Source: Convolutriloba macropyga
Lineage: Eukaryota
Assembly: GCF_964194025.1 (NCBI RefSeq)
Contig: NC_134474.1
Location: 51,646,001-51,710,000 of the forward strand
DNA length: 64,000 nucleotides
Direction of reading: 5' to 3'
Shown: piece after piece, positions 4,800 through 46,779 of the stretch
How the letters are laid out: each line of letters starts with the position of its first letter
How positions within the stretch are numbered: the stretch's first letter is position 1
The notes under the pieces: generated by a model
Databases searched by the model: none
Told to the model about the DNA's origin: nothing
Seen by the model: only the letters and a program-made list of their open reading frames with translations
Translations under genes and position numbers: made by a program

Positions 4800-4803
4800 T
4801 TTT

Positions 4804-20600: not shown

Positions 20601-21998
20601 CTTAGATTATTTATGTTTTGATGCTCATTATGTGCCAACTATAATTTAAAGTGCCACACATGTCTTCTTCTCAGTTATGGAATTTCTACAGAATACTAAT
20701 TTCTTGTCTCGAGATTCTATAAAAAGTTTGGTTGAAGAGTTCAACTGCGCCGATTTTGAAACGTATAAATGGACATTAAACGTATAAATGGACAGTAATG
20801 CCACAGGTGATGTGGCCGAGCCCAGGAAAAACAAAATTAGTGAGAATTCAAACTGGAAGAGGGTAATTTTAATGAAAATTTGATCATTGATTAATTGATT
20901 GTACTTGTCGGCCGCTAATATGATCACTAATACTATTATAGAAAATATTTTATGCCTACTAAATCATAAGTTCCCAGTGTACTACGCATAAAACTGAACA
21001 TTTAATACTTAATCGAGTAATGTGTAAGTGATACCTTGTCTGGTAGCACGGAGAACCGAAATTGTGCATAAAATGATTAAATGATTAACATTAAAATGAC
21101 TATAATATCTATTGGCTGCAGTTTTTTCATCCAATCAAAAGAAGGGCGAAGCATTACAAGAGTTTAAATGGCTCCGGGCTTTGAAAAAGTTTTGAAAAAT
21201 GAGGCGAAAAAGTGTCAAGAATCAAAGGGCTTGCAGAAAGTGAGCTTGAATCTAGCTCGTTGTGAGTCCGTGATGGTGTAATTGCAAGTGAGACATCAAG
21301 GACTGATTTCATGTCAACTTTCAGTTTAAGAAAGAACATCACCTTTCGCTTCTTCTGTAAGACTTCGAATGGCATTGGAAATTTTTCCCGTTTACATGTA
21401 TTTAGCAAATTTCTTTGTATTCATCAAACGATCGTTTTGCTTTAGTTTGCTCAGACTTTCCTGGATAGCTTTTGCTTCAAGAAACAGGAAATCTATGTCC
21501 ACTTCATCCATTGATCTAACCGTCTTGTAATGGTTTTTTATTTGGGGCGTCATCCTCCGTTCTTGTTCTTGCAAGAATGAGATGAGGCATCACCATTGCG
21601 CAGTATATGGCCGTTTCCTCGTTAGAATCATTTAAAGTGGCAGACAAGCTCAGGATCAAGAGAAAGAAAGTCCGAGCGGAATATAAGCTGGCGAAGAAGA
21701 CCAGTGCAGACGAATGGTGGTTAGATGTCGTGGAAGAAGCCAAATTAGCAGAAAGGAAGGGCGACACCAGGACCATCTATAAATCGCTTCGAGCCGTGGG
21801 GATCAGAAGTCTCCAAACCATCCAAGAGGAGAAACTCTCCCCAGAGGAATTTAAAGAACATTTCATGAAGGTCTCGCTAGAACTCTATGAGCGGGATGCC
21901 AGCGATATAATGAGAACGGCTAACTGATAGCGGAGGCGGGACAGGATTGGACGAATGTTGAAAATTTAGCTAAGGACAGGAAGAAATGGAAGACACTG

Positions 21999-22484
21999 GT
22001 GAAAGAGAGGCAGAGAAAGCTAATCGAGTGGGAAAACGAAATGTGTAAGTACCACAAGGGTGGATTGAAACCCACGCGAAGTCAGCGAGCAACTGGAAAC
22101 TCCCTTCGTTGCAGATGGGAAGGCTGCACGAAAGTATGTAGATCAAAAACTGGACTCGTGCAACATGAGAGGAGCCACAAGCCTCAACAAAAGTTTTTTT
22201 TACATGTGAAGAATGCCAGAGAACTTTCAAACAGAAACAAAACCTGACGAACTATCAGAAAAGTTGCGATGGAGCGCCGGAAGGTTTCTGTGGAGCGTGT
22301 GGTGACCGAATTTCTAGCAGAAACAAATCGCGTCATGTTAAATTGTAGAGCACGAGGGAGTAACGTGCAAACACAGACAAGCCGCAACAGTGAGAGATAT
22401 AAAACAACGCCCCAGTTGCATGGTATGGATCTCAGCCAGGAACATTGCACGACACAGAAACACAAGCGATGGAGAACCGACTGA
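21999..22484 (+). pseudogene. C-terminal zinc-finger cluster of RTE-like ORF2
   Basis: CRWEGCTKVCRSKTGLVQHERSH. In shifted frames: CEECQRTFKQKQNLTNYQKSC and PSCMVWISARNIARHR. Confidence 0.7.
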
Positions 22485-22571
22485 AGACTAATCTACAGTC
22501 CTCAGAGCGAATATCACAATTGTGCTAAATTTGTAAATAATTGTGAATAAACCTTAGCTTTTAATCTCCAT

Positions 22572-23233
22572 ATGAAGACCTGCCCGCTTAATGGAAGAAT
22601 GAGGTTTTCTTTGTAAAGTTCCCATTTGCGGGACCAACTCAGGATACCTTTTTCAGAAGTTATGCTGTGGCCTAAACCGACTTGAAAAGAGACAATTCGC
22701 CATAACATTGATCGGAACAACTGCAAAGTGACTCTAATAAAAGACGAAGTAAAGCGAAATGTCATCACTACCCAACCAACTCCGGAAAAGTACAACCGGG
22801 GGATCCTAGGATCGTCCTTAGTTTTCGGCGTTTTTCTGGAGGACACAGTGTGTGTCAGCTGCCCTGGAGCGGGATGGGTAAAAATGAAGAAAATTGCCAT
22901 GCTAGGGGGGCGGCAACGATGCAGTGAATATGGATCATTCGGAGAATGACGTTGCCGGTGTCCTCCTCAAATTCAAAGAAACGACTTAAAATGTATCTGG
23001 ACAAAGGGTTCCAAATAGTGTGCGTCCAGTGTCCCGGAAGAAAGAAACATAAAGAAGTTATGAAAAATTTTAATAAAGGATACAGAAAAACATGCAAGAA
23101 GCTAAACATTCCCTTCCACTCAAGAAAACGTTTTTCTGTCAAACATCTAGCTAAAGAGGGAGTCCACCCAAAACCTGACAAGATCAATGAGCTGATGAAG
23201 GACATCTACAATGCTCTGAGATCCCTAGGCTAA
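22572..23233 (+). pseudogene. SGNH/GDSL esterase-like ORF inside the RTE-like insert
   Basis: Block I GILGSSLV, block II SCPGAG, block III GGGNDAV (after a frameshift in the G-run at ~22905) and block V KEGVHP. Confidence 0.7.
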
Positions 23234-23314
23234 AGTGTCCCTTTGCGGAACCAACTGCTGTGTCGTCTCATGCATAGCAGTCCCTCAAGGCTAATAAAGA
23301 GAGCCGTAACGAGC

Positions 23315-23349
<35 letters not shown>

Positions 23350-23869
23350 TATGGCCGTTTCCTCGTCAGAATCATTTAAAGTGGCAGACAGGATTTCATT
23401 CAAGGTATCGGTGAACTTAAGGACTGTTTTTTCTTGGCAGCGTAAGAAAGATTGCTTTCCAATGAACGACTTGTCTGTAGATGTTCTTCATAAGCTCTTT
23501 TGTTTTCCTCAAGTTTAAGACAAAAACAGCAAGGTTCAGGACAGGCTTCCCTAGAGGCTTGCGATGTCTGGCCATCAGCCGCTGCATGGTTTAGAGTTGT
23601 TAACTCTGAGGAGATTAGAGTTGCTTTCGTTTCGCAGCTTACGCAGAGGCAGTTATCATGGTGTTCTCGCCTTGCGCTGAGTCCACTACAATTTAAGTAG
23701 TGGTAAGTGGCGCATGAGTAAAACCAAACCCCTCCACCCTGAGATGGTTTGAATTTTTTGAGCTGTGTGACTGCTCGGACATATAGATGAGATCTAAAAA
23801 GCTATTAGTAGTCTGAAAACATATGATTAACTAATGAGTAAAGATTTCAAAAATGCGGGTTAAATAACA

Positions 23870-24345
23870 AGCAAACAGATGGTAACCATAGAAAAAAAAT
23901 GTATACCATCTTTACAGAAGTGATTAAAAGGGAAATTGAAGTATGGGGACACAATCTGAATTGCTGGATGAATAAAACTACTAACTAATTTATATAGAGC
24001 ATAATTTAGATTTTTAGTTTGATTATTTAGAAAACGATTATTTGTGGAGCCAATAGTTGTTGAAGCGTGGATGAAATTTGTCAATTATTGTTTTCAATAA
24101 TTTTCTCCAGTTGTTTGAAAAGTCATGTGTGCTTGTGTCGTGAACATTAAAACCAGCAATTACAGTTAGTGTGTAGTCTCTCTGGTCTATACTGTTGAAG
24201 AGTTCTGGTCCAATCCTCAAGCGTAGCAGCTCTGAAGGAGTGTATCGTCGCCTTTGTTTGCTTAGGGTCCATTGTCCATGAGAAACCTGGAATTTTCTTC
24301 GACTTGAAGCGGGGAGTCAACGTTCACCTAAAAAAGACTGTGGCA
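23870..24345 (-). pseudogene. Second SGNH hydrolase-like remnant
   Basis: Across frameshifts: VFLG..., IHSFRAATLED, LTVIAGFN, FCKDGIHF. Confidence 0.55.
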
Positions 24346-24637
24346 TTACATGGAGAACAAATGATCAAATGGATATTTTAAATATATATTTTGAAAAATT
24401 TAATATGAAAAGAGACAATATAATGATTTTGATGCCTGACGGGTGTCTCAGGGTGTGTTTTGTCACGGGTCCTCTCACTGAATGGCCAAAAATATTTGGA
24501 AAACTAACTTATTAAATCGCAAACGCTATGTAATAAGTTTATCGCAATAATTAGGCTGTAAGTGTAATTTTAAGTGATATATAGTGCAACAGTTTTTTTG
24601 CAACTGTAGTTTTGGTCTGTAGGTTTGTAGGCAGTCA

Positions 24638-25039
24638 GGGAACTGTTCAGCAATTGCCCCCCTTTTGCAAAAGGGGGGCTATTCTTGAATAGAATTTAAG
24701 AGGAATTTATTAACCAATCACAGACGAATAATAACTTTTAAATAACTTCCTTGTATGCGCATAGTATATTAAACTAAATAGAATAAAATACACAATGGCA
24801 TGCCGAATTAGAAGACAAAACGAAAAGAATTTCCGACTGTTGGCCAACGGGACGGTTGGCGCGCGTCCCACAGCGCATGAAATGCATGGCCGTGAACAGC
24901 GGTCCACAATTGTGCTTTAACCAATATTCGGCTATCTAAAGTGTAGGCCAAGTGATAATGTGGTAAAGTATAGCACAGAAAGGGGGACAATTCTCTACTA
25001 GATACCAAGGGGGGGGGGGGCAATTGTTAAAAAAGACCC
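24638..25039. mobile_element. MITE-like element (~400 bp)
   Basis: Imperfect TIRs gggaactgttcagcaattgcccccc and gggggggcaattgttaaaaaagaccc. Flanking direct repeat gcagtca(g) at 24631 and 25040. Confidence 0.6.
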
Positions 25040-25447
25040 GCAGTCAGTATTATCTGTGCTCAGTAGACAAAGCGATTGCCATTTTCTGATAGCAGGCGCT
25101 GGCATGCTTGTGATCAGTTGAGATTTATTTCTAGTTTTAGTGTACATTGCTGCAGAGATTAATAGTCCACTTCACTTAAGCATGGTGAACAAAGTCCTTC
25201 CACTTTCTGTTAAGTGAAATCGTTGACCAAACAGTGCCTGATTTATCTTGGAGAGTGAAAAATTAAATACTGTGAAAAATGTAAAAAAAAATCAGGTTGA
25301 TAATAATTTTATGCCCGGGATTGCAGAGAAAATAGGGGGTGTAATAATTAGTGGTGCGCATTAAATGTGTGTTTATAGAACAATAAAGTTAAACTAATAT
25401 TTTTTCAAAATTTGCATTCTTCGAAAAAGAATTAATGACTAAATTTT

Positions 25448-28400
25448 TCATAATTTTCCTAAAACAATTTAAGCCTTTTCAAACCTTGAATTATGGTGTG
25501 TTTCTATATGATCAATAGTTTTGCAATGACGCTTGTACAATGAAAGTGTCACTATAAATACTCAAAATAATGTTTTCAAAATTATTATACTGCTCTTCGT
25601 TCGCAAGCTACAAATTGGTTGAAAAAAGTGAAGAAAAATGTGCAATATCAAAGTGCTTTTCATCAACTAAAAACGCAGCAGCTGTTTGCTTCTGATGGCG
25701 AAATAGAAGCAAAATTCAGTTTAAGTGATAATTTTTTGGGTGCGCTTAAACTTGATTAGAAGCAAAAAGAAGCAAAAATTTAATTCAAACAGATTTTCTC
25801 ATCCTAAATTTTTTCTACTTCAAAAAATGGCTAAATTTTTAACTACAGAAAAAAATTGCTCGCGGAAATCGCCGTACCCATAAAATTGAAAATTGTATAT
25901 TAATGTTTGAGACTAATCAAATGTTAGCTAACTGATCATCAAAAATTATCATCTTATGCTCTCCTCTAACTGTTTCTGAGTTTGTTACGTCAATTATTTT
26001 TCTCATTAGCAGTGAAAAGTTAGATGAATTCTGTAATAAATCGATTACAATGTATACGCCATCTTGGCACTATAGATAGTTTTTTCTCACTCCTCAACAT
26101 GTTGAAACTGAACATCAACCGTAACTGAAGTGCGAGGTCAAGTGCGGTGGCCTTTAAAGAACTCAGGTAGCATGGAAAAATTTACGTACTCTGGCCAATC
26201 AAGTTTCAGATCGTTATTCTCTTTCCCTCTCTCGACTGCATGTTTTATGAACATTGCTATTCCTAACAATCAAATCACGAAGAACAAAAATAGGGGCTGG
26301 AACATTGTCAAGCCTTATTTTGACAAAGTATTTCAGATTAGTCGTTCAATTGAAACCCCATTTTAAGAAACTCTCCGCTATTTTCTAGAATTGATATAAA
26401 CGATGTTTTTTTGCCTATGGTTTCCTCCAGCAAATGACAATTGTTCCTCATTTTTAGAATACTTGATCGTTCCTTAGAAAGGAATCACATATGAAAGAGT
26501 CTTACTCCTTCTTTGGTTGTCATAATTATATTATTCGTATGAATTCAATTACAGATTCGCCTTTTAGTAAATGCCACTTTTCCATTAGTTAATTGCAAAC
26601 CTAACATAAAATATAGCCGGCAAATTGCCGGAAAATAGCTGCCGTTGAACCGCTTGACGGCAGCTATTTTCCGGCATTCTGCTTATTCGGTTAGATTCTA
26701 AAACTACACTTAACTAAGCTTTTAATCTGAACGCTGTTGAGCATAATACTAATGCCAGCTATCAAAAATTTTAATGAATTTTGATAACCTAATTCACTAA
26801 GACTTAATGACCGGGATTTAAATTTTTATCCCGTTTCTTTTGATTTTGTTCTTTTGACTGTATTCACTACATAGCGCATTTCAGTGCTTGAAAGAATTTT
26901 AAATCCATTCAGTTGAAACAGTTAATGAGGTACGTCAGAATGCGGATGCTCGGAAATAAAGAAATCAAAATTCAAGTCTTGAACAAACTTCCTCTAGCTA
27001 AAAAAAACCTGTAGAATACCAAAACCCATCTTTGAGTCGTAAAAAGACCAACACGAGTAGTATGCCCAAATACACGCTTCGTCACGGGGGACGTCCCCTC
27101 TGTGACGATCCGTGTACACGCTTCGTAAGGGGTGGGGACGTCCCCACCCTTGACGACTCCGTGAGGTACAGTTTTGAGGTCAAAAAATTTTGTCTCTCAA
27201 TTTTGCCAGAGGGACAAAAACTTGTAAAAATTTTCTCGATTTCTGCCGGGGACAAAAACCTGTAAAATTTTCTCAAATTTGTTGGGGACAAAACTTTTGT
27301 AAATTTTTGTCAATTTTGTGCGGAGAGAAAAGCTTACGATATTTCCAGCTATTTTGTGCGGGGGATAAAAACTTGTTAAAATTTCTCAGTTTTCTGGAAT
27401 TATTGAAAAAACTTATGAAAATTTTGCAATTTCTTGGGGTCCATTAAGTTGATTTTAAAGTTTAAAAATTATGAAACCTTTTTTTTAGGCGAAAAAGACT
27501 ATTCATGGGTTTTCAAAAGACATATAACTGACTTACCCTTTCTTTATTTCAATCTTTTGATAAGTTTTATCTAATATATCGACAGTAAAACGAAATGAAG
27601 TTAAATTTTGGTCGTTTTGATCCAACATCTGGTTTTAATTTGATAGTTTTATTGATCATATGTTATCCCAGATAAGGGAGTGTGGGCAGATTAAAAAACC
27701 AAAAAAACTTAAGTGCCAGGGCTCCAAATTGTGAATTCTTGTGTCTGGTATGAAATTTGCAGCGTCAGAGGTGAAAAGAATGCATCTTTGCAGAGAATAA
27801 GGAAGAAATAAACGTATGAAATGGACAAAGTAAATGCTCAAAACTAAATGAAATTTTCCAAAAAAGTACTGAAAAATTGTTTGAAAGTGTGCGGTAGAGC
27901 AATTCATATACCACGTTTAAATGACGGAAGAGTTAAAAATCGAGAAAAAATGTGTATTTTTAGAGTGAAAATTGTTGTTTTTGGACAATTTTATGCAAAA
28001 TACTTCCACAAAAAGCAATTCCATTATGCAAAAATTGTTTTGCCTTGTGAATGACGAAAAAAGCAGACCGGTTAACTGTGCAACACAAGGTGTTTGAGTG
28101 ATAATGCAAATGTGATCACGTAAAATAGTGTAAAACTTGAGGAGAATTTAAAAAATGGTAAAATTTTAACGGGAAAAACTGATGACCGACTGAACCTTAC
28201 TGCGTAACTTAGGCAAAATGATAGAATGAGCAGACTATTTCCCTTATATACTTAAGAAAATAAACTTCTCTTTTTCTGTGAAGGATTTTTTGTTCTTTAC
28301 TTTAATGAACAGTTTTCCTGTTCTGTTTTTGTTCTCCTAATAGGTTTATAGCACTAACAACAACCATAGCTGTATGTCTACAGTGATAATGTATTTTTAT

Positions 28401-28708
28401 CCAGTCTGGACTTCTTTTGCCGACCTCTGATTGGTTGAGAGCTGACTGAAGATTAATTTTAGACTGGTGCATATGACAAAGTATGTTTTTTGATTTTTTT
28501 GTTTCGCAAGTTTTGGTCTCGGCGTTTGTGATGTTTGGCCAAGTTTTAGGAATTATTATGTCTCTAAATGTGTCAACATGTGTCTTCCATTCCCATAAGC
28601 AATTCAGTGTGGTCTTCTCGGCTTCTCTGATTGGTCAGTCGATTTTGAAGCTTTATTACCGTCTTGCACATGTTAGAACAAGTGTTGTTTTATTATCAAA
28701 GACAAGGT
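25448..28708 (+). repeat. Left arm of long inverted repeat (probably extends further left)
   Basis: Reverse complement of 60905-64000, with 25448 pairing to 64000. Near-identical ORF translations 26130..26366(+) / 63051..63320(-) and 27656..27907(-) / 61549..61800(+). Confidence 0.97.
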
Positions 28709-29717
28709 GTAAAAAAGAAATGAGGAAAGACTGTGAAAAGAATTTGCAAAATTTTTTTTAAATTTGCTTTAGAGCAAAGATTTGGATTTTGTGAGCAACC
28801 AAACAGTATGCAAGAATTGAAAGAAAATGATTATTTGTGTTGAATTGTTTTTGCTACATGTTTAGGCGTGTTGCATCTAAGAATAGCTCAGAACTATACT
28901 TGTCACGTAGAGCATAAAAGTTGGAAAAATTTGGTTTTTATCTTAGCCACTCAGAAAACAGCAAACTTTGAAACTTAACTTTATGTCTAGTAAGGCGAAA
29001 GTAGAGTGACTACAGACAGTATACGAATGCGTTGTTCTATGTCTTATCATAACCAACTGGAGAATTCGTGGACAAACAGAGACAACATGCAGTTGGCATT
29101 GCGTTATTAGTGGTTAAATTTATAAAATTTAAAACTCGATGAATTAGTCTGTCGCTATTATTAGAATGACAAATTCTTATTCACTCGTTGCTTAATTATT
29201 GTTAATAATAAATGATTTAGACTCTTCAGAGAAAAAAATTAAAAATTTTGTTGAGTTGCAGTTTGGTAAGTGAAAAAAAAGACTTGGCATGCGTTTTGAT
29301 CAAACAGTTGTTTGCAAAAACTGATTGGAAAACATTCACGAGAAAACCTTATCCATTTCCACGTCTTATCCTGAAAACTCAGTCAGATTAAACTATTTCC
29401 TGGCAGCAGGTGAATACTTTAGTGAGTTGGACGGACTGCTTTGGTCGTGATATTGCTCTAAATTTATGTCCATATGGAGGTCTCATTGGCATCGACAATT
29501 CTTCTTTCGACAAGTACCTAGATGTGTCAACAATTTTCACTTTTGCACGCTATATAACACGACGCAGGTGGTTTCATATATGAAATATATAACCAAGGAC
29601 GTGGTTATTCTCAAATGCTTCCGTGGAAAAGCAGCAACTGTTTTAGCGGGCATTTGTTGGGAATATTATTTTGCTTATATATAAAGATTTTTCATCCCTC
29701 AATGTTTCACTTATTGG

Positions 29718-30200
29718 AATGCTGAGCAGCAAAACGGTTGTGTTAGACGTTGAAGGATTTCGTCACAGAAAAGAAAAATTTTTTGTTAGAGAGTTTGGAA
29801 TTTGTACTGAGGACTACCTTGACTGCGTGTCATTTTTATCAACAACAATTATAGTGAGTCAACAACTCAACAAAAGCAATCTATCAGTTGGTTGAGTAGA
29901 AATTTGCACGGTATTGATTTGGACATAGGAAATTATCCCTATATTTATCTTACACAAATTATTCAAAGCGTTCGCTTGCGGAGTCCTGGTGCAATATTCT
30001 ACGCTAAGGGAGCGGAGAAAGTTAAACTTTTGTCAGAGTTGCTTGAATGCCCTGTTATTGATCTGAATTCACTCGAGAGTCCTTCGATATCTGTGAACTA
30101 TTTTACACAAAATTGTCAAAATCATTCAAATTGCAAAAACAATTTCAACAAACATTGTGCAAAAAAAGACCATTTTCTATTTCAACTGGTTAACCAATGA
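29718..30200 (+). pseudogene. DEDD-like nuclease-fold protein typical of Polintons (frameshifted)
   Basis: VVLDVEGFRH.KEKFFVREFGI, WLSRNLHGI, YAKGAEKVKLL, VIDLNSLESP and a C-terminal C..H...HCA. Confidence 0.65.
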
Positions 30201-30670
30201 AAGAGGATTTGACAAAAGTGGAGGCAATCTTGTCACCGAGTTCAACAATTTGTGCCTTGATTACGGGGCACGGCAATCTGAGTCTTTCAATTTCCAAAGA
30301 CAAAACCATAAAAACCGGAAATTACAGAGAAAAGTTAAATTGTTGCTGACTGAGGACAAAATTTGCTCATTCACTCATTTAGTATATTTTATTGAACCTT
30401 TTTGTCAGTGGAGAAAGCAGAATGTCAAAAAATCAACCCAGAGTATGTCCTACGAAACTCTTACCGATGTCGAAGCACCCGGTTCGTGAGGAAATTGACA
30501 AAAACGATCCTTCACTGCTAAAAGAGATTCAACACTTGGTGAAGGAAGAAAGAGTGCACAAAATTGTTTTGTTTATTATAACAAAACTGTGAGACTCTGA
30601 GTGCTTTATGGTTCATATAAAAGACCTTCTAACTGAGTTCACTTGCTATGAGTTGTTTTATTTGAACTGA
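30197..30670 (+). pseudogene. Unknown Polinton-module ORF with internal stops
   Basis: ATG overlaps the end of the previous gene. The frame continues into ORF 30392..30592. Confidence 0.35.
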
Positions 30671-30714
30671 TATCCAAATTATACTTTTTTAACAATGTTT
30701 TATTTTGTGTTGAG

Positions 30715-30990
30715 ATGGAGGGAGTAACATTTGATCAAATTGACGCTGTTGTACAGGAAAATTATTTTGAAAAAGAAAGTAGCAGCAAATCGTCTTGGAA
30801 ATTTTGTAACCAAACAACTTTGCCAAGCTCAGAAGTTGTATTTTTTATGCAAATGTTTGTTATATTACTGCTAATATCGCTCTGTATTGTGAAATTAACC
30901 GTCTTAAAACCAAATTGTGAAGAAACTTCATTTTGGATATCCATATTGTCAAGTTTAGTTGGATACATTTTACCAAATCCAAGACTATGA
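30715..30990 (+). CDS. Small two-transmembrane protein conserved upstream of Polinton ATPases
   Basis: Intact 91 aa: SEVVFFMQMFVILLLISLCIVKL...FWISILSSLVGYILPNP. The stop overlaps the ATPase ATG (ATGA). Confidence 0.75.
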   Translation: MEGVTFDQIDAVVQENYFEKESSSKSSWKFCNQTTLPSSEVVFFMQMFVILLLISLCIVKLTVLKPNCEETSFWISILSSLVGYILPNPRL

Positions 30991-31690
30991 ATAAAATTAT
31001 ATCCACAGAAGATAGAGTCTTCATAGCCGTTGTAGGGCCTACAGGTTGGGGCAAAACAGAGTTAATTTTCAAAACGTTGAGTGGCAACATATTTTAACCG
31101 AAAATTAACCACATTACATTTTTATACCGAGAAATGCAACAAATATACATCAAAATGGAGCAAAAACTGTGAGTTATTTTCAAAAAGTATGCCAATTTAG
31201 AATTTTTGAATAACCTTGAAAACTGTCTTTTGATAATGGATAACTCGTGCGAAGAAATTTATAACGACAAAGAATTTTTTAAGTTGGCCACTGCAGGACG
31301 TAATAAAAAATTTATTGTTCTTTACATAAAGCACAATCTTTATCAGCAGAGCAAGTCGTCTCGTACAATAGACTTGAAGACATCATACATCTTTTTGTTC
31401 AAATCAATTCGCGATATTCAACGAGTCGAATTTTTAGGCAAGCAGTTAAATCTTGTTAAATTTTTAAAACATTGCTATCAATTCGCAACGAAAAAACCGT
31501 TTGGGCATTTGCTTATCGATCTTGATCAAAATACGTCTGGTTGTTTACGATATTGTTCAAATATTACTTAGCCAGGTCCTACGGTGTTCTATTTTCCATC
31601 TGATTAAGCAAAAGAAACCCCTCTAAACAGTGAAAGAGAAAAAATTATCTATACTGAAGCAAATGGTGCATTTGCAGCCAAAACAGTTCA
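30987..31690 (+). pseudogene. A32/FtsK-HerA-family DNA packaging ATPase
   Basis: MNKIISTEDRVFIAVVGPTGWGKT (Walker A), CLLIMDN (degenerate Walker B), GRNKK...HNLYQQSK..RTI, FLFKSIRD, KPFGHLLIDL. In-frame stops. Confidence 0.93.
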
Positions 31691-31940
31691 AGAAATACGT
31701 GCGTAATTGTGATAGTGATGTTATATTGGTTTTATGTGAATGTCTTCACAATGTTTTGCTGGGTCATGTAGGAGTGAAAGTAAGAAACAGAAAGTTAGAA
31801 AAATACAGACACATATTTGAAAGTGTTCTCAAGAAAAAGTCAACAATGGATAAACGATGAACGCTTTTTCTAACAAAATCCGGTTTCGAATTGATTGAAC
31901 TCATTATAAAATTTTATTTCATTCATTTGAGTTATACCAT
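31630..31940 (+). pseudogene. Small basic Polinton protein (core-protein-like)
   Basis: VILVLCECLHNVLLGHV...LEKYRHIFESVLKKK...KSGF matches the CEC..NVL.G.V motif I recall from Polintons. One internal stop. Confidence 0.6.
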
Positions 31941-32640
31941 GTCAACTGCTGAAGTATTTTTTTTGATTCCCAAAAATCAGTTTATGAAAGAACAACCGTA
32001 TACCTCACAAATTCTAAATGATCCCAATGTTCAGCGTACCGGTGCTCAAATTTGCTTTTTGAACCGTATGCGACCAAATGAAAACACTAAAACAGAGGAC
32101 CAGGAAAATTTAGATACAAGGGAAACAACTGATCCCACTGAGTTGACAAAAACAATTTCGAACAAATTTCTTCAAAATCTTAACGTGTTAGCGCCAGCGA
32201 AGTTTACCAGGACGGAGAAAACAGTGAGTCTCATTAAAGAGTTAAAAAATGTTGTTATAGATGACGGAAATTTCATTGATGACGGAACAGCACAAGGAAT
32301 AAATGCTCCCATTTTGCTCTATAATTTGCAACAACCAACTGAAAAACCAAATAGTCCAGATGATTTTAGCATTCTTGATGTTTTAAACATAAAAGAAGAC
32401 TAGGTGATCAACAGCATTGCTAAATTTGCGATCCGGAAAAGAACTCAAAGAATTGCCAAACCAAAAAAGAAAAAGAAAATTGTTTTGCCAAAAGGAATCA
32501 AGCACAAAGAAACCAGACAATTACTTACAGAAAAATCCTCAGACGCCGGAAGTGGTTTCGAAACTTCATAGGAAGACAGAAATCAGGAGGAGGAGAAAAA
32601 CTGGGAGTCTTTCGACGAATGAGAAAAAAACTGCTTGAAT
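31937..32640 (+). pseudogene. Unknown Polinton-module protein preceding the integrase
   Basis: Open frame MSTAEVFFLIPK... to 32403, with a probable frameshifted continuation. Confidence 0.45.
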
Positions 32641-33558
32641 TAAAATATACGAAAGGTCCCGCAGCATACGGAAGCTTGAGAAAGCACAAATTTGAAACCA
32701 AGTAGAGTGAAATTGTTCCTGGAGAGCAAAAATGCTAACACAAAGCACAAGAAATATCGAAAAAATGTCCCAAAACTGAAAGTTATTGACTACGATATAA
32801 TTGAAATTTGGTCGCTAGATTTGGCTCATGTGGATAAATTAGCAAAAGAAAACGAAGATGTAAAATACTTGATGGTTGCGGTTGATTGTCTCTCACGTTA
32901 TATACGTGTTAAACCCTTGAAATCAAAGTACGCCACATCAACAGCCGATGCATACAATAAAATGATAAAAAACAAGCGACCTAAAAGTGTGGGTAGATTC
33001 TGGTACAGAATTTAAGGGCTCTTTCGGCACTCTGTGTCAGAAAAATGAAATCGAAGTTAATAACACTTTTAGCGAGAAAAAAACGCATTTGAATCCGCAA
33101 AAAAATCCGCAAGAAAAAATACATGATCGCCCAAGAATTTGATATACAACTATTTAGAGGACAAATGGACATACTCGTGTATTAATTAACTGCAGAGCTT
33201 TGTACAAACCATTAACTCTAGAGTCAACAGGGTAACGAAATTGGCGCCGAATAAAATGACCAAGAAAGACGTGCCTTAATTGCTGTCACTAACATTTAAT
33301 GCGTCAGCAACACTAGTTCGTCAACCAAAGTCTTACGTTGGGGACTTTGCGCGAATATCGAAAGCGGATCTTCCCTTTAGAAAAGGATATAAGCAAACAT
33401 TTACGAACAAAGTTTTTGAGATTTACGATATATCTACAACAAATCCCCCTACTTATAGTCTCATTGACGCATCCCAAGAGCCAGTCAAAGGAAACCATTA
33501 TGAAGTAGAGTTGGTCAAAGTTAAGGACAATAGTAGTGAAAAACCAAAACATGAATGA
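32610..33558 (+). pseudogene. Polinton-type retroviral-like (rve) integrase
   Basis: IWSLDLAHV, KYLMVAVDCLSRY, WVDSGTEFKG (shifted frame), INSRVNR..KLAP, VGDFARISK...FRKGYKQTFT..VFEI...PPTY...G.HY..EL.KV. Confidence 0.93.
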
Positions 33559-34030
33559 ATTCACGGTTCACTTAGTTTCATCAGCCTCTATGAATATTTT
33601 CCCTCAAAACACATTGTCTTCTTTCAAAAATTTTTGCAATGAAGAAATAAATTTAGAGGGGGATTGGTGCGTTGCAGTAAGTAAAATATTCTATTTGATG
33701 CTGTATCCCGACCATACGGAGGAGAAAGACGTATCATTGGAATTGGTTCCTATGAAAACCTTGACCATCTTCTGAGATCCATAAAATCAGCTTCTGGTTT
33801 ACTTCATTTTGACTATCAATATAACAAAATATAACAAAAGAGTTTTGTTCCTCTTTTTCGGTAAAAACGAAGGAATTATTTTTCCGGATACCGAAATTCC
33901 AAGCATACTAGGTTTCAACGGTATTCATGGTGGTTCTGGTTATCATATTGATACAAGATGTTGGACACTTTTGCAAATCTGACTATGGCAGATGACAAAG
34001 AAAATGCTTTTGTCGGTGATTATCCTTTCG
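33555..34030 (+). pseudogene. Minor capsid (penton) gene, 5' part
   Basis: MNEFTVHLVSSASMNIFPQNTLSSFKN...LEGDWCVAVSKIFY. Ends ...FVGDYPF at the LTR junction. Confidence 0.85.
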
Positions 34031-34466
34031 ATAAGACGTTTTCTGAGCTTACCTTTAATAGGATACTCCAGGAATTGTCTTATGGTCGTCTCAAGAATAA
34101 TAATGTTCTTAAGAGTTACCTGACTAATTAAAGTTCTATGATTCTAGTCTGTTACTCTTCGATGGGAGTACTAGTGGATAGAGCACGGGCCCCAATGCTG
34201 CTATCTAGACTTAGTCTCAAATATATTTCACAAGCGGAGAAGAGAGAGAGGTTCATATACTTTATTGTTATATCAGGTCTGACTCTGAAGGAACCAACTA
34301 AAGTGTTAAATGAAAGGTTTTAGCACATTTCAAAAAGGGAAAATAATAAATATAGTTTTATCCAATCACAAACGAGTATTTGAGTTTCAATAAATCATTT
34401 ATTCTTTTTTGAATAAATAGTTTTTTCAAGTTTATATCTGGATGTCATTCAAGTTTGACTCCATCT
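34031..34466 (-). repeat. 3' LTR of giant Gypsy element
   Basis: Direct repeat of 57039-57468. About 33 substitutions and one 6-bp indel by eye (~92%). Confidence 0.95.
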
Positions 34467-36299
34467 TTCCATGTTGTTGAGTTTTTGAAAGTTTTGTATT
34501 CTGTATATTTGGTTCTTCTACTTTTCTTTTCTAGTGGAATAATTTGTAGTTGTAGGAAGATTCGTGTTCGCATGCAGTTTTGTAGTCGTTGGGCAGGTCA
34601 GCTATTCAAAGACATTCTCTGATCATCAACAACCGCAAAAGTATCTATTCCATGAACCATCAGAGTTCCAATGATTCCCACAAGCGGCGGCTGCCGATGA
34701 TCCAGTGGTGTGTTGCTGTTCTTTCCTTGTAGTTGTGTAGTGAGTTACCTGACTTACCCGAAAGTTTCTTAGTTTTAATTGTTAGAGGTGAGTTGTGAAT
34801 TATATCAAAAAATATTATAGTGTTACCCGGTAGAGGTGTAGGTGATATTGGGTATTTATTAACAAGTCTATCGTGAATGGTTCACGAGGTTCTTGTTAAC
34901 TATACATTCAAATATTTTTGTAACACTTTTACATGTATACATGTATCCCTCCCGGTTGGAAAAAGAAAAGGATCCGCTTTATTCATGTTAAATTCGTTCA
35001 CATATGTTCTAGGTAATTGAAATGTTAGATGTGAGTATGTAAAAATTCAATGGCAATTAATTAATGGTACAACAATTTTACCTTCTAAGTTATAGTTAAA
35101 ATTACCTGATTCATATGAGGTCAAATTTTGTTATGTAACACGCTCGGCAAGTATCGTGTACATTTGTTTACAGTTCTCGGCTACACACAGTAGAGGTGAA
35201 TGTCTCGAGAATATTCACAGGTGTTTCATTTTGCATTGTGAGTTGTTAATATTCTGTATGGGAGTAATCAGTGTTATCAAACACTGGGTGACATTTAAAT
35301 CTGTCCCTTTAAAGGTTATCTGTTAGAAGTATGTGTTCGATTGTTTGGAAGGAGAAAAAGTGTCTGTCGAAACTGGTCGATGCTGTTTTATATCAGAAAA
35401 TATGGTGTACTATTTACTTCCATGAGTGTTGGCTGTTACTCACGGTAATGTGTTCTAACATGCTATTTTGAAATTTTCGAATTGAGGTCAATGTTATAAA
35501 TTTTTGGGTTGTTATATCTTTTCATGTATGCCTTTACTAGTTAGTGCGCTCCGAAACTAGTTTTGTGACAACGTTTTGTAGGTGTATTGTGAATATTAAT
35601 ACTATATTGTTGAAAATAGGATGGTTAAAACTCATTCAGGTGCATGTTCTTGTGGTAATACCTGTCTTTACATTTTGGCATTTCTTAAATTCTCAACTTA
35701 ATTAATTGCTATTTAATTGCATATATAATTACATGTGGGTGTCATTTGAGTCGTTTACCTAAATACAGTACATTTGTCATTACATATATTACATTGTTGA
35801 GGTAAGTTATTTCAGAAATGTCTTCCGTTTATTGTTCAGAATTATTACAGTGCCTAAATAGGAATATTAATGTGGGGTATTTGAATATATTCACACTAAT
35901 CTATAATTCAGGTGATTTATTATTTCCTAATCTATTTCCCTGAGTTGTTTGTCTCAAGTGCGGTTGCACTTGTCGATATCAAGTGTGTTGGTATTTTGTA
36001 GTTTGATGGCACTTCTTGTAGTGCGGTGGCACTTCAAGTGTAGTGCGGTAGCACTTCATTATTAAAAATAGGTGAAGCGGTGAAGCTTTTATTAAACTAT
36101 GTAATGATTACAAGTTAATCAATGTTTAGAACAGAATAGTGACAATTTGTAATAATGTTTACATAAACTGACATTTACTGAAATACGTTATCAAGAAATT
36201 ACAGGAAGACATTCGTGGTGATATATAGGTGAGATAAAAAAGATAAACAGTTTAATGTGTAGAGATCAGTGCGTTGAGACAGTTTTGAATCAGTTTTGT

Positions 36300-38033
36300 A
36301 TGTTGTGGATAGTTTGTCAGATTTTTGAGGTCTTCAAACTCTTTAAGGAATTCTTTGTTTTGTGATTAAAAATATACTGGCGCATTATGTAATAGGTTCG
36401 GTGTTATGTGTGGTACTGTTGCTTTTACAGGTTTTTGTATTTCCAGTTCTTGATCCGTCGGTCGCGGGATCCTATGTATTCTATGAATTTCTTGACTGAT
36501 TCGCTGGTACGCTTCCGTGAATTTGATAGGTGTGATAATGCTCTGCTGGTTCGAGTGCTTCGATAGGTACTATAGGTGGTCGTTCGGGGTTTTCGATGGG
36601 TTGGAAGATATAATAATTTTACACGGGGTCAAAATATCTCAGGGTGCCTTTCATGTACTTCTCCTTAATAATATATGCAAATTTCATGAAATAAGGTGAT
36701 GTCATCTGATCGTTTATATATATAAAATTTTCATATGGGAGGTTGTCTCGTAGGTAAGTATAATAAATTAAATTATGTATTTTTTTGGTTTCATGCACTT
36801 TAAAATTGTTACATTGTACATCTTTAGGGGTGGGATGTAGAAAATTAAAACTTAATTGAAACATTTCATGAGTGTATGCTTTAAATGCGTTTACATCCTG
36901 CGAAGCTTTTGCAATTACATGATCGCGGGAGGGGCTACGGGGTAAAGTGAATTTATAAGCGTATCGATACAAAAACTTCTCCGTCAAGCTGTAAAATTGT
37001 TTTAGTTGGGGGTATCGTTGGTGATGAACAACGTCTCTCCCAATATTGCGTGTGCTTGTTTTGATTGTTTCTACTGTTTCACAGGGTATTGGTGGAAGGA
37101 ATTCAGGAAGTCGTTGTTGCTGTGAATGGAATTCCTCGATACAAAAATGGTGTAGTTTTTTTCGTACGGGATGTTCGACCAATTGAGGAAAGATAAGAGC
37201 GGGTTATATTGCTCATTATCCGGGTCCACATACAGTCGGGGATCATCATTTTTGAACCATATGGTCTCACTGACGTGCGTGCTGGGTGATTGCTCGTACG
37301 TACTGATGTGGAAAAAACTTTTGGGGTCACTGCTACGTGGGGTGACTGCGTGTGGAAATCTCAGGTTATTAGGACGAATGTTTGAGATCTCTCCCCGTTG
37401 AACTAGGTTGTAGTGTTCAATTATTGGGTTTACATATTTTCCTAGTCGGATATGAACAGGTGTCGTGCCGTTTAATTCTGTAGGTGGTTCTGGCATTGGT
37501 TCTGGCATTGGTGCAGGCATGGGGGGATTGAAAGTGGCTGGAGGCGGGTATACTGGCATTGGTGGATATTGGCTTTCATTGCTATACGGGTTAGTGTAAT
37601 AAACTTGTTGCATTGTTGGTGTTAATATAGGTGTTGACTGGTATAGCGGTGATGCATGTACTTGATTATATTGATATGAAAGGTTTGCTATAGGTTGATG
37701 GGTGGGGTGATACTTGACTTGTTGGTGGACTTGCTTGGCTTGGGAAGCGATGTGTTTCCTCTTCTCCGACAGTGAGCTATGTCGCACTTCTTGTCCGTTG
37801 GTGTTATCGACTTGGACAACGAAGTTCTTTACTTTCTGTTCCTGCTCAGACGGAGGTCGCTCAGATGGGCTCGGTGATTGTGGTTGTGTACTGGTTTACA
37901 CACCAGTATCCATTGTGGTGGATTAGACAATGGTTTCAGCTGAGCTTGGACTCGTTGCTCCTGAGCTTATTTCACCCTCTTCCACGGAGGAGCTAAGTTG
38001 AGAGTCTGGTTTGAATTCTCACTCTGATGACAT
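36300..38033 (-). pseudogene. Accessory ORF downstream of env (Ser/Pro/Gln-rich N-half, unknown C-half)
   Basis: Overlapping ORFs 37071..37787 and 36619..37182 in sense orientation. An upstream in-frame MSSE...SSVEEGEISSG segment contains stops. Confidence 0.6.
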
Positions 38034-38424
38034 ACTAAAACAAATCCAGATGTATTTGTTGTAGATAATTGAATCATTGTAATAAGTCTTTTTAAATATG
38101 AGGTGATATCTACAGGTTATTTTATTAGTAGTAGGTTATTACTACGAATTGAATATTAGTGATGCTTACGATATGTTATTTGTGAATCGGTGAATAACCT
38201 TTCATAATCAGTTAGGTGAATAATCAGTGAGGTGAAAAATCCGTTAGAGCACTGAAAGGTTATACACTAAAAGGTTATACACTAAAAGGTTATACCCAGT
38301 AGTTGAAATTACAATGTGCGTATTACTCTATATAATAGAGGTGAGTATAACTGGTGTGAAAATATCGCTGAAATGGTGAAATAACATTGTGAAATACGTC
38401 TTTTTAATTAGGTAGGCGATAATA

Positions 38425-41400: not shown

Positions 41401-41840
41401 TGGTTCTATTATCGCTCCGTTAAGATTAGTCTGTACTTGGTGTATTTCAGTTATTTTCTGTTTTGATATTGGAAATTCCAGGTTTTTTGGGTATTTGAGA
41501 GTGTATTTCGAGCTGTGCTTTTTCTAGATGTTGTATGTTATCTTCGATTTCTATGTTCCGGCTAATGAATGGTGTATCTATTTGAGTTGGAGGGCTTGGT
41601 TTTCCTCAGTTATGGAACCAATAGTCTGCTCGTATGTTCCATAGATCTTCATAATCTGATTCGGTGATATTTATAATATTCGTTAAGTAAGTATTATTTA
41701 TTTCGTGTTTAGTTCGATCTTGTAGGTTTTTGATGTCTTTTGCACGAAGTTTAATTGGTCCTATACCGTATTCAAGGTATGCTAGTAATAGGAATAGAAA
41801 TATAAAGGTGAAAAGTATTACGTTATTATTACTAGTTGAA
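38425..41840 (-). pseudogene. env: Envelope glycoprotein, class III (chuvirus/Monjiviricetes-like) fusion protein
   Basis: Signal-like VILFTFIFLFLLLAYL (~41780-41825), furin-like KRSRR (~41320), VEHYDCE, LPCKVERGYCDPTALTKSTIVWEP, FYCGS..LYPTEY, LCEQ, MYRC, CYNKIPV...YVHQLTRK...VPC. TM segment IFGWPWYILEKIAIIYAMVNFLLFVF (~39220-39300). Confidence 0.8.
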
Positions 41841-44800: not shown

Positions 44801-46150
44801 GCAAACTATTACAACTATCACAATTTTGTGTACTCACTTGGCAAAGGTGATTATCAAATGAAGAAGGTGATTTGAAATTTGTGGAAGCGGATACTGAATT
44901 GGAGAGGAGTAGAGGAAGTGTGTTTGAGATTACTCCGTTCAACTGGATAAGAACCGGTTGGAATATATTCGTCGATTGGTTGATATTTATTGATTGCAAT
45001 TGGAATCAGAGTAATATCTGATAAGCGATTGATCAGGTGTTAAATAATTGAAAGGATTACCTGTATCCAAGATTGATTCTGATTTTGTGAAAATATTAAG
45101 AGGAATTTGCTTACTGAGCTCTTTTAAGAGTTCTTGTTTGATTGAAGAAATAGAGATTGAATGTTTTGTTTCTGGTTTGATGAGAATGTTGGACTTGGCT
45201 TAAATTATTAAGCTTTGTTGATTCGAGATCTAGTTTGAAATTGGATTTATTCCAAGATTGAGATTGAACTGATAGTGAAAGTCAACTGACTAGCAAGAGG
45301 CAGAATCGAGGTTGTGATGTCAATTCTATATCGAATTGGGTCTATTTTCTATAATTCCCAATTAGCGTTTTGTTTGAGTTTTAGAATCCTTTAAAGCGTG
45401 TCTGCCATTCATCAATAGTGGCCATTAGAAAGGTGTTTTAATGAGCAAGGTGTTTCCATTGGGTTCTGAACAACTCTAATTGAATCTGAACAACAGGAAG
45501 TGGTTTCAATTGGCTTCATTGAGTGGCAGTTGCGATCTCTAAACTTGTTCTACTCTGTTGAACACAGTCTTTCCGTCTTTATTCAGTGATTAAGTATTGT
45601 TTAACAATGTCGATTTGCCTGCTTTAAGAGTTTTTGAGGCTTTCCAAAGCCGTATAAGTGTGTTACTTTGTCGGACTGAATACTTTAATTGCGTCCGTAC
45701 AAGTGTTTGAAATTCTTAAGTATTTGAAAGCATTTTCTTTTAATTATTATATTTGGGTCTTCCATCTATTTTCAAGTGTTTTAATTGAATCCTTAAGGGA
45801 TTTCTGCATGATTTTTCCTTTCTGAGATAGGAAAAATTGAAATTTGTTGGTAATTTTTGAATCTCTCGAGTCCTTAGGTGTAGACTTGGTGTTATTTTTC
45901 AAGTGCTAAAATTGGTTATATCGTACTTCAGTGTTCTTATACGAAGATCGTGAATACGTATTAATGTACTGTTTAATGTAGTAGGCGTTTCTGGGAGTCT
46001 GAGTTTGTGATCCGTTAAAGGATTGAAGTGTTCGTATAATGGATTTAAATGTTGAAGGGTGTTTGATTGACGTTTGCTAATTTCATATCTGATTTATCTA
46101 TTTTCGTTCATTCGGACGATCCGTGTCATTTAGCAGAATATTGTGTGATT
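41832..46150 (-). pseudogene. Degenerate extra coding region between integrase and env
   Basis: Chain of sense-strand ORF fragments: 44781..44999, 44409..44669, 43897..44205 and 41832..42152. No domain recognised. Confidence 0.5.
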
Positions 46151-46779
46151 TAAGGTTATGAATGTCGTGATACAGGTGTTTAGTGTATAGGTCGTAAATG
46201 TAGTGTAGAATTAGAAAATGACATAGTGTCGAATATGTTGTACGCGCGGTGTGTGCGGGTAATTGTGTGTATGTATTGTGTAGACTGAATCGTTAAACAT
46301 AGTGGTTATTAATTTAAACACTTGTTATGAATATCGTAGTGGCACGAGTGAACGGAAGAGTTCACTAAACAGATCGTTGAATAGACAGATTAATAGCTGT
46401 CAAATATGAATGTTTCAAATGTGACTAGAGGCGAATATCAATGTGACAAGATGCTGTCAAATATGAATTTCAATGTGGCTAGAAGTGATTAGATATGTGA
46501 ATTATAACATAATTGTGTAACTAGAGATGACTAGAGGTGATTTGATGTGTGTGTTATCACATAATTGTGTTTATTAAAAAAATTTATTTTGTATTTTTTT
46601 CAGGTGATTGAGAATGGACTTTCGTGTATGTTTTTTGAAGTTGCTGGTGAAGTTATTTATCTTGTTCGTTATGTTGGGGTGTATGGTGTGGGAGTATTTT
46701 ATGGCGGGAGTAGTGGATGGATTGGTAATATCATCAATATTGTCAATATTATGTAGTTGTCGGAATAGATAATATTTCC

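What the first reader, a model, noticed from the sequence alone, without database searches (positions are those of the whole stretch)
25448..28708. Age paradox: outer inverted arms look younger than their cargo
Seen: the outer ~450 bp of the arms differ at only ~5-6 positions (~98-99%). The nested Gypsy LTRs differ at ~33 of 430 (~92%), and nearly all Polinton genes are broken. Identity falls to roughly 85-93% at 27450-28300 and recovers near 28310-28460. Inference: the arms were homogenised after the Gypsy insertion, either by arm-to-arm gene conversion or by panhandle-type replication and mobilisation in trans of the whole ~39-kb unit. The latter would make a dead DNA virus a vector for an env retroelement.
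Basis: partly seen in the sequence, partly recalled or inferred. Interest (0 to 1): 0.8.

Follow-up and report, generated by a model that had tools for sequence, protein, structure and literature searches.

The report
Inverted repeat grown into host flank
The "too young" outer arms are not part of the dead Maverick/Polinton: they are 1.66 kb of host DNA from its right flank, later copied upside-down onto its left side by a repair event seeded in the element's inverted ends, an ordinary kind of rearrangement and no sign that the unit moved.

Summary
In detail: the arms are about 98.5% alike over their outer 2 kb, the nested LTRs 92.3%, and the inner arms 87-94%. The interpretation changes.

The source contig and a sister locus (same flanks on both sides, same Gypsy insertion, about 5% diverged) were recovered from the same assembly. 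Three Gypsy-free relatives were also recovered.

The true Polinton ends lie at window 27056 and 62394, with an AGTAGT...ACTACT end motif and 1.65-kb TIRs. In the sister they are flanked by a perfect 6-bp duplication, CGTGTT.

The outer 1,659 nt of the left "arm" (25397-27055) are absent from the sister. They are an inverted copy of the right host flank, including the reverse complement of the target duplication, and they replace 63 nt of ancestral left flank.

The copy runs seamlessly about 400 nt into the left TIR, where the left arm carries right-arm-derived states. Its outer junction has about 1 nt of microhomology.

That is inverted-repeat expansion, after the Gypsy insertion and the locus split.

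Older arm-to-arm conversion tracts also exist. Movement of the 39-kb unit is not supported: it has no outer target duplication and no copy with different flanks was found. The Gypsy family also sits on about 20 contigs that carry no hit to the two Polinton ORFs searched.

The parts
21205..25396 (.). Left host flank, shared with the sister locus
   Evidence: Window 21205-25396 matches L006 1-5222 at 92-95.5%. Substitution divergence is 3.9%.
25397..27055 (.). Left outer 'arm': a derived inverted copy of the right host flank. It is absent from the sister locus and from unrelated copies. Its last 6 nt (27050-27055, AACACG) are the reverse complement of the target-site duplication.
   Evidence: The sister has 63 unrelated nt here (L006 5223-5285). 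Three-way site counts: ourL-only 15, ourR-only 8, sister-only 47 of 1654. The outer junction 25396|25397 has about 1 nt of microhomology.
27056..28708 (+). Left TIR of the Polinton/Maverick. It starts with AGTAGT. Segments: 27056 to about 27460 overwritten with right-arm sequence; 27461-27925 alike already at the locus split; 27926-28246 never homogenised; 28247-28462 a low-divergence block.
   Evidence: Homology with L006, L005 and L007 ends exactly at 27056. Four- and five-way site patterns support the segments.
28709..34029 (+). Polinton interior, left piece, with decayed genes: unnamed ORFs 29289-30338, A32/IVa2-like ATPase 30987-31705, rve integrase 32707-33558, and the first piece of a 226-codon gene model from 33551.
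   Evidence: Bounds come from mapping L004 gene models. There is a weak rve hit, rve hits in L004 and L007 and a sub-threshold ATPase match.
34030..57468 (-). Nested Ty3/Gypsy-like LTR retroelement, 23.4 kb. LTRs 34030-34466 and 57038-57468; gag 54935-55336; RT, RNase H and integrase pieces 49847-53491; env-like Monjiviricetes-type fusion glycoprotein pieces 39107-41289.
   Evidence: The empty site is present in L004, L005 and L007. The same insertion is in the sister locus.
57469..60904 (+). Polinton interior, right piece, with decayed genes: end of the 226-codon gene to 57582, 132-codon model 57770-58162, 285-codon gene 58145-59001, adenain-like protease 59418-59840, and a minus-strand 196-codon model 59904-60457.
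   Evidence: Peptidase_C5 was precomputed for the L004 orthologue. About 170 family ORFs were found in the same assembly.
60905..62394 (-). Right TIR of the Polinton. It ends ...ACTACT at 62394.
62395..64000 (.). Right host flank and source of the inverted copy (the copied stretch runs to 64052, outside the window). Its first 6 nt, 62395-62400 = CGTGTT, are the target-site duplication. It continues without a break into distal flank in both loci.
   Evidence: Divergence from the sister is 2.9%.

Best explanation
This is inverted-repeat expansion by homology-seeded repair.

A Polinton/Maverick-type element with 1.65-kb TIRs integrated here, making the 6-bp duplication CGTGTT. A Ty3/Gypsy-like element later inserted into one of its genes. 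Soon afterwards the whole locus split into two lineages (duplicate, divergent allele or related genome).

Later, in this lineage only, a break at or just outside the left end was repaired using the right TIR, which lies inverted on the same molecule, as template. Pairing within the TIR converted about 400 nt of the left arm to the right-arm sequence. The extended end was joined back to the left flank by end joining with about 1 nt of microhomology, and 63 nt of the original left flank, including its copy of the target duplication, were lost.

The result is arms of 3.3 kb whose outer 2.06 kb are only about 1.5% diverged.

Shown: the structure, the polarity (right to left), both junctions, the relative order of events, and additional older arm-to-arm conversion. 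Inferred: the initiating break and the repair pathway (SDSA or BIR-like synthesis followed by end joining).
For: 1. Three independent loci end their homology exactly at window 27056/62394: the sister's left side (L006), the left side of L005 and the right side of L007.

2. The sister keeps AGTAGT...ACTACT ends flanked on both sides by CGTGTT. Here the right side has CGTGTT but the left side has its reverse complement, AACACG.

3. Window 25397-27055 is missing from the sister's left side, while the sister's right flank has the sequence and runs on without a break.

4. The tree is ((ourL,ourR),sister R): 15 and 8 private sites against 47.

5. Within 27056-27472 there are 8 sites where ourL, ourR and sister R share a derived state against sister L plus the outgroup. 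No other TIR segment has any such site. The first retained ancestral left/right difference is at 27479.

6. The outer junction is non-homologous with about 1 nt of overlap.

7. The unconverted TIR segment is 12.7% diverged, more than the LTRs at 7.7%, as a host element must be.

8. Composition does not explain the pattern: CpG o/e is 0.8-1.0 and transitions roughly equal transversions.

9. The mechanism has precedents. For plastid IRs: a break in one IR is repaired against the other, and the copy progresses through the junction into single-copy DNA (PMC8592052, citing Goulding 1996). For human inverted-repeat rearrangements: one junction lies in the IR by BIR and the second shows microhomology (PMC4352052).
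Against: No reads were available, so neither the junction at 25396|25397 nor the two arms are verified by spanning molecules.

The relation of the two loci (paralogue, divergent haplotype, or second genome in a metagenome-style assembly) is unknown.

Divergence from the sister is lower in the copied flank (2.9%) than in the TE interior (5-6%). Timing therefore rests on within-region comparison, although the proximal left flank is similarly slow at 2-3.4%.

The repair pathway itself is inferred from the product alone.
Confidence: 0.85

Rival explanations
1. Plain arm-to-arm gene conversion inside a genuine 3.3-kb Polinton TIR.
For: Arm-to-arm conversion does occur here. Ten sites are locus-specific on both arms, against none of the control 'crossed' pattern. 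The sister's arms are nearly identical over about 27660-27925. The arms were already alike over 27461-27925 at the locus split.
Against: The outer 1,659 nt are not TIR. They are absent from the sister's left side and from L004, L005 and L007. They contain the reverse complement of the target duplication and are continuous with host flank on the right. Conversion between pre-existing homologues cannot create them.
Confidence: 0.07
2. Panhandle-type replication and movement in trans of the whole unit of about 39 kb, with the Gypsy as passenger.
For: Only the high identity of the outer arms. A second locus does carry the same Gypsy junction.
Against: - That second locus shares both host flanks for at least 4 kb on each side.
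- There is no target duplication at 25396/64053.
- No pPolB was detected in this family.
- For the left-interior ORF the sister is the only relative above 77% identity.
- Three other copies inspected have the empty site.
- About 20 contigs with Gypsy relatives share no contig with the listed relatives of the two Polinton ORFs searched.
Confidence: 0.02
3. The ancestor was symmetric: the element landed in a pre-existing palindrome, and the sister later lost its left outer copy.
For: It would also explain the presence/absence difference between the two loci.
Against: The sister's left junction has the direct 6-bp duplication expected of the original integration. Ours has its reverse complement instead. 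ourL and ourR are closer to each other (1.4%) than either is to the sister's right copy (3.3-3.7%). The 63 nt in the sister have no counterpart here.
Confidence: 0.03
4. Assembly or polishing artefact: a repeat-induced misjoin, or homogenisation of the arms.
For: It cannot be checked without reads. Long inverted repeats are hard to assemble.
Against: The two outer copies differ at 23 of 1654 sites, with a sensible tree. A misjoin through the TIR would continue into distal right flank, not return to the true left flank at a non-repeat junction. Polishing cannot create 1.66 kb that the sister lacks.
Confidence: 0.04

Closest known systems
Expansion of the plastid inverted repeat by double-strand-break repair (the 'ebb and flow' long-expansion model of Goulding et al. 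1996, as described in PMC8592052)
   Same: A break in or near one repeat arm is repaired against the other arm on the same molecule. The copy progresses through the repeat boundary and incorporates adjacent single-copy DNA into the repeat. The result is a longer inverted repeat with a young outer part.
   Different: This is a nuclear locus, and the repeat arms are the TIRs of a dead virus-like transposon, 34 kb apart. The event ends with a non-homologous junction and a 63-nt deletion.
Inverted-repeat-mediated inverted duplications in human genomic disorders (DUP-TRP/INV-DUP; PMC4352052)
   Same: It has two junctions: one within inverted homology, attributed to BIR, and one non-recurrent with 1-4 nt of microhomology. 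The duplicated segment is inverted.
   Different: The scale here is 2 kb, not tens to hundreds of kb. There is no triplication. This is a fixed or polymorphic evolutionary event seen only as its product.
Polinton TIR-mediated rearrangement of host loci in C. elegans (eri-6/7; PMC11414722)
   Same: Long Polinton TIRs act as substrates for recombination that reshapes neighbouring host DNA.
   Different: There the rearrangements are inversions between several Polinton copies. Here a single copy's two TIRs seeded an inverted duplication of flank.
Maverick/Polinton elements (PMC8097293; definition in PMC5499653)
   Same: The (AGT)2//(ACT)2 end motif, the 6-bp target duplication, long TIRs, an rve integrase, an adenain-like protease and an A32/IVa2-like ATPase.
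   Different: No protein-primed polymerase was detected and the interior is only about 8.8 kb. The TIRs (1.65 kb) are slightly above the 46-1,447-bp range reported for vertebrate Mavericks.

Membership tests
Polinton/Maverick | [quoted passage not shown] | tested here: not met
   No polymerase family hit for any of the 20 stop-free pieces of at least 77 codons that were scanned from the interior, nor in 20 gene models of L004 and L007. No ORF longer than 285 codons in L004 or L005. The interior is only about 8.8 kb. A very diverged or lost gene cannot be told apart.
Polinton/Maverick | Retrovirus-like (rve) integrase | tested here: met
   PF00665 in L004 (precomputed) and in L007 (E = 6.8e-10). 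There is a weak hit in the decayed window copy. The orthologous region is 32707-33558.
Polinton/Maverick | Adenain-like cysteine protease | tested here: met
   PF00770 Peptidase_C5 on L004 11851-12276. Its orthologue in the window is 59418-59840 and is broken.
Polinton/Maverick | A32/FtsK-type packaging ATPase | tested here: inconclusive
   The L007 307-aa P-loop protein matches Pox_A32 at E = 1.2e-3 and Adeno_IVa2 at E = 0.024. Both are below the curated cut-offs. PDB hits are to generic ABC ATPases only.
Polinton/Maverick | Jelly-roll major and minor (penton) capsid genes | tested here: inconclusive
The AlphaFold2 model of the 285-aa gene family had mean pLDDT 41.5 and was unusable. The profile search against PDB found nothing. 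There were no Pfam hits.
Polinton/Maverick | Long TIRs, 6-bp target-site duplication, (AGT)2//(ACT)2 end motif | tested here: met
   TIRs are 27056-28708 and 60905-62394. The ends are AGTAGT...ACTACT. CGTGTT lies on both sides in the sister and on the right side here. The motif and TSD are as reported in PMC8097293.
Ty3/Gypsy-like LTR retroelement with env | LTR pair, gag, RT-RNase H-integrase order, short target duplication, envelope-like gene | tested here: met
   LTRs at 92.3% identity. Retrotrans_gag, RVT_1, RT_RNaseH_2 and rve in that order on the minus strand. PF24664 fusion glycoprotein at 33.7 bits, above the 27-bit cut-off. Empty site and an imperfect 4-5-nt duplication.
Inverted-repeat expansion / IR-mediated inverted duplication | The new repeat segment is single-copy flank of one arm, copied inverted next to the other arm, and continuous with the old repeat | tested here: met
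Inverted-repeat expansion / IR-mediated inverted duplication | One junction inside the homology, with donor-type sequence on the recipient arm; the other junction non-homologous or with microhomology | tested here: met
   Eight right-arm-derived states on the left arm, confined to 27056-27472. The outer junction has about 1 nt of overlap and a 63-nt loss.
Inverted-repeat expansion / IR-mediated inverted duplication | Initiation by a double-strand break or collapsed fork | not testable with these tools
   Only the product is visible.
Composite element moved as one unit | Target duplication at the unit's outer ends, and copies at other sites with different flanks | tested here: not met
   No duplication at 25396/64053. 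The only other copy shares both flanks. No contig is shared between the Gypsy and Polinton relatives listed.

The most novel reading that the evidence does not exclude
The long TIRs of dead Polintons may be recurrent recombination substrates in this genome. On this reading they repeatedly convert each other, which makes TIR-based dating unreliable. They also occasionally grow outward into host DNA, seeding multi-kb near-perfect palindrome arms tens of kb apart, and so a general source of inverted segmental duplications and fragile sites. This locus and its sister each show independent conversion tracts, which hints at recurrence. Generality is untested.
Probability: 0.3. Interest if true: 0.4.

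Novelty: new member of a known kind. Interest (0 to 1): 0.3.

Why it matters
It removes an apparent paradox and an exciting but unsupported idea, that a dead DNA virus ferried an enveloped retroelement.

It gives a clean, base-resolved natural example of inverted-repeat expansion at a nuclear transposon. The ancestral state is preserved at a sister locus, so donor, recipient, both junctions and the relative timing can all be read directly.

There are two practical lessons:
- Arm identity is not a safe clock for elements with long TIRs.
- The edge of an inverted repeat is not necessarily the edge of the element. Target duplications and independent copies are needed to place the termini.

Tried and rejected
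- Pfam on 40 stop-free pieces of the window, 20 of them from the Polinton interior, gave only a weak rve hit for the Polinton part. Annotation had to come from the less decayed relatives L004 and L007.
- Structure prediction of the 285-aa gene from a 25-sequence family alignment failed (pLDDT 41.5). No fold search was run on it. The PDB profile search was empty. Capsid and penton identity therefore stays open.
- Rfam, tRNA and Pfam scans of the arms and flanks found nothing.
- A compositional or CpG explanation of the identity gradient was rejected.
- A faster clock in this lineage, suggested by LTR private counts of 31 against 17, was rejected: interior counts with an outgroup go the other way, 105/81 against 129/113.
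- Higher amino-acid identity of some short family fragments (for example P0074 at 89%) does not mean closer copies. Its locus, L007, is Gypsy-free and 84-88% identical at the DNA level.
- The low-divergence block 28247-28462 could not be assigned. It had only 1 retained ancestral left/right difference and few private changes, yet it is 12-16% from the outgroup.
- A 10-nt match between the lost 63-nt flank and the TIR near the inner breakpoint is at chance level (E = 2.9).
- The source organism could not be identified.
Full report
**1. The observation**

The window has no N runs. A long inverted repeat pairs 25448-28708 with 64000-60905.

On a global alignment the arm-to-arm differences are:

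| Segment | Divergence |
|---|---|
| 25448-27460 | 31 of 2008 (1.5%) |
| 27461-27925 | 5.9% |
| 27926-28246 | 12.7% |
| 28247-28462 | 1.7% |

Identity is lost beyond about 28700.

The direct repeat 34030-34466 / 57038-57468 has 33 mismatches in 431 aligned positions, 92.3%. The difference between the young tract and the LTRs is highly significant (Fisher p = 4e-10). It is not compositional: CpG o/e is 0.8-1.0 everywhere and transitions about equal transversions.

One caveat matters. The right arm runs into the window edge, so 25448 is only the mirror of base 64000.

**2. Anatomy**

The direct repeats bound a 23.4-kb minus-strand Ty3/Gypsy-like element. It has gag, RT, RNase H and integrase in that order, plus pieces of a Monjiviricetes-type fusion glycoprotein.

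The DNA around it belongs to a large family of decayed virus-like elements. About 170 and 102 ORF relatives of two of its genes were found, all in one ENA assembly. Less decayed members carry:
- an rve integrase;
- an adenain-like protease (Peptidase_C5);
- a P-loop ATPase with sub-threshold matches to Pox_A32 and Adeno_IVa2.

No protein-primed polymerase was detected, and no member seen has an ORF above 285 codons.

Against the gene models of relative L004, 15 of 16 mapped models have at least one frameshift or stop in this copy.

The Gypsy splits a 226-codon gene model. Its two pieces, 33551-34032 and 57471-57582, are contiguous in three Gypsy-free relatives. Whether that gene is the penton could not be tested.

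**3. Source contig and true outer edge**

An exact-protein look-up placed the window on ENA ERZ25071359 contig ctg35175_57x_l, 161.5 kb. Beyond base 64000 the repeat continues for only about 52 nt. The repeat therefore spans 25397 to 64052, about 38.7 kb. No target-site duplication flanks these outer edges.

**4. A sister locus**

A second contig of the same assembly, ctg37183_63x_l (loci L003 and L006), is collinear with this locus from at least window 21205 to 68252. The collinear stretch covers the left flank, the Polinton, the same Gypsy at the same junction, and at least 4 kb of right flank. About 5 kb of it was not fetched: no sister sequence was obtained for window 42477-47412.

Substitution divergence is 5-6% over the transposon interiors and 2-4% in the proximal flanks.

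Because both flanks are shared, this is a duplicate, a divergent allele or a related genome in the sample. It is not a transposed copy.

A four-way comparison of the LTRs shows no site where the 5' and 3' LTRs already differed at the split: 0 'orthologous' sites, and 17, 14, 8 and 9 private ones. So the Gypsy inserted only shortly before the split.

**5. Where the Polinton really ends**

In the sister's left half the flank matches up to window 25396. Then come 63 unrelated nt, and homology resumes at window 27056.

Two unrelated Gypsy-free copies also end their homology exactly there: L005 on its left side, and L007 on its right side at 27056/62394.

The sequence at that point begins AGTAGT and the other end finishes ACTACT. 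This is the (AGT)2//(ACT)2 end motif reported for Mavericks, together with 6-bp target duplications (PMC8097293).

In the sister both ends are flanked by CGTGTT. Here the right end is followed by CGTGTT, but the left end is preceded by AACACG, its reverse complement.

The element proper is therefore 27056-62394, with 1.65-kb TIRs. The outer 1,659 nt of the left 'arm' are an inverted copy of the right host flank, target duplication included.

On the right, that flank continues without interruption into distal flank in both loci. So the right copy is the source and the left copy is derived. The 63 ancestral nt have no counterpart here.

**6. Polarity and extent of the copy**

Three-way counts over the outer segment give ourL-only 15, ourR-only 8 and sister-only 47 of 1654 sites. 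That is the tree ((ourL,ourR),sister).

Inside the TIR, over 27056-27472, our two arms differ at 4 four-way sites. Eight sites show ourL = ourR = sister R sharing a derived state against sister L plus the outgroup. That signature occurs in no other TIR segment, and the reverse signature occurs twice. The first retained ancestral left/right difference is at 27479.

So one tract of about 2.06 kb was written from right to left. It begins within the TIR homology, crosses the terminus seamlessly and ends at 25397 in a non-homologous junction with about 1 nt of overlap.

Its age is 1.3-1.5% arm-to-arm, against 2.9% between the loci in the same sequence. That is roughly a third to a half of the time since the split.

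**7. The rest of the arms**

- **27926-28246.** This segment carries 20 sites where both loci keep the same left/right difference. It was never homogenised, and at 12.7% it is older than the LTRs, as required of the host element.
- **27461-27925.** There are few such sites, so the arms were alike at the split. Seven locus-specific both-arm sites (overall 10, against 0 of the crossed control pattern), together with near-identity of the sister's arms over about 27660-27925, indicate further independent arm-to-arm conversion.
- **28247-28462.** This block is low in divergence among all four arms, yet it is 12-16% from the outgroup. Its history is unresolved.

**8. Mechanism**

The product matches a known class. 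In plastid IR expansion, a break in one repeat is repaired against the other and the copy progresses through the junction into single-copy DNA (PMC8592052, describing Goulding et al. 1996). In human IR-mediated inverted duplications, one junction lies in the repeat by BIR and the second shows 1-4 nt of microhomology (PMC4352052). Polinton TIRs are already implicated in rearrangements of host loci in C. elegans (PMC11414722).

Two break positions fit equally well:
- within the 63 nt outside the left end, with clipping of the non-homologous tail and heteroduplex correction over about 400 nt;
- near 27460, with loss of about 460 nt from the other end.

This step is inferred.

**9. The vector hypothesis**

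Nothing supports movement of the 38.7-kb unit:
- It has no outer target duplication.
- The only other junction-bearing locus shares both flanks.
- For the left-interior ORF the sister is the only relative above 77% identity.
- The three other copies examined have the empty site.
- About 25 relatives of a Gypsy ORF lie on about 20 contigs, none of which is among the contigs listed for the Polinton ORF relatives. This comparison was made by eye on contig lengths, and only the best 120 of 170 hits were listed.

The Gypsy family evidently spreads on its own.

**10. Verdict**

The finding is an instance of inverted-repeat expansion plus recurrent TIR conversion at a dead Maverick-like element. It is well documented here but of a known kind.

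**Remaining uncertainties**
- There is no read-level verification.
- The relation of the two loci is unknown.
- The host is unidentified.
- The capsid genes are unconfirmed.
- The family has no detectable polymerase.

Pieces on either side of the Gypsy were always compared apart. For broken genes only counts and outer bounds were printed. The consensus line that the alignment tool printed by itself was not used.

Noticed in passing
window 27056-62394 and loci L004, L005, L007: This Maverick-like family has more than 100 decayed copies in one assembly. It shows integrase, adenain-like protease and an A32-like ATPase, but no detectable protein-primed polymerase and no ORF above 285 codons. It carries the (AGT)2//(ACT)2 end motif described for vertebrate Mavericks, although CpG o/e of about 0.9 argues against a vertebrate host.
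   Followed up: partly
window 34030-57468: The nested Gypsy-like element is unusually long at 23.4 kb. It carries pieces of a Monjiviricetes-type fusion glycoprotein (PF24664) at 39107-41289, plus several unnamed minus-strand ORFs between integrase and env (about 41.8-45.2 kb) and after env (36.6-37.9 kb).
   Followed up: partly
LTRs 34030-34466 / 57038-57468 and their sister copies (L006 12258-12702, L003 9275-9711): The four LTRs form a star: 0 sites separate 5' from 3' across loci. The Gypsy insertion and the locus split were therefore almost simultaneous. Private counts are uneven (31 here, 17 in the sister), but interior counts do not confirm a rate difference.
   Followed up: yes
window 4973-5716: Tandem array of a unit of about 75 nt, at least 7 copies at 66-85% identity.
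   Followed up: no
window 4595-4800 and 12151-12356: A 206-nt direct repeat pair at 97% identity, 7.6 kb apart. It is possibly the LTRs of another, younger retroelement.
   Followed up: no
window 17862-19005; also 13058-13171: Tandem or dispersed repeats with a period of about 550 nt (88.6% over 606 nt), with related fragments elsewhere in the left part of the window.
   Followed up: no
window 13299-13575 and 15324-15569; L007 11874-12164: A dispersed repeat of about 250-300 nt is shared between the window's left part and the flank of an unrelated Polinton copy on another contig (80-81%).
   Followed up: no
L006 2315-3396 (sister's left flank, equivalent to window 23583-24254); L004 10870-11924: The sister has a tandem duplication of about 680 nt in the left flank that this locus lacks. 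Relative L004 has a 528-nt tandem duplication (95.5%) that doubles one small gene model.
   Followed up: no
window 27195-27318: A 37-nt tandem repeat (3.3 copies) lies inside the outer part of the TIR. The sister arms carry deletions here, which inflates pairwise mismatch counts in this stretch.
   Followed up: partly
window 27454-27463 / 61990-61999 and L006 5224-5233: A 10-nt string lies next to the outer breakpoint in the ancestral left flank and recurs in the TIR at the inferred inner breakpoint. It is at chance level (E = 2.9) but positionally striking.
   Followed up: partly
window 62001-64000 and 23501-25396: The host flanks nearest the element diverge from the sister only 2-3.6%, against 5-6% in the transposon interiors and the distal right flank. 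The cause is unknown (slower mutation, constraint, or exchange between the loci).
   Followed up: no
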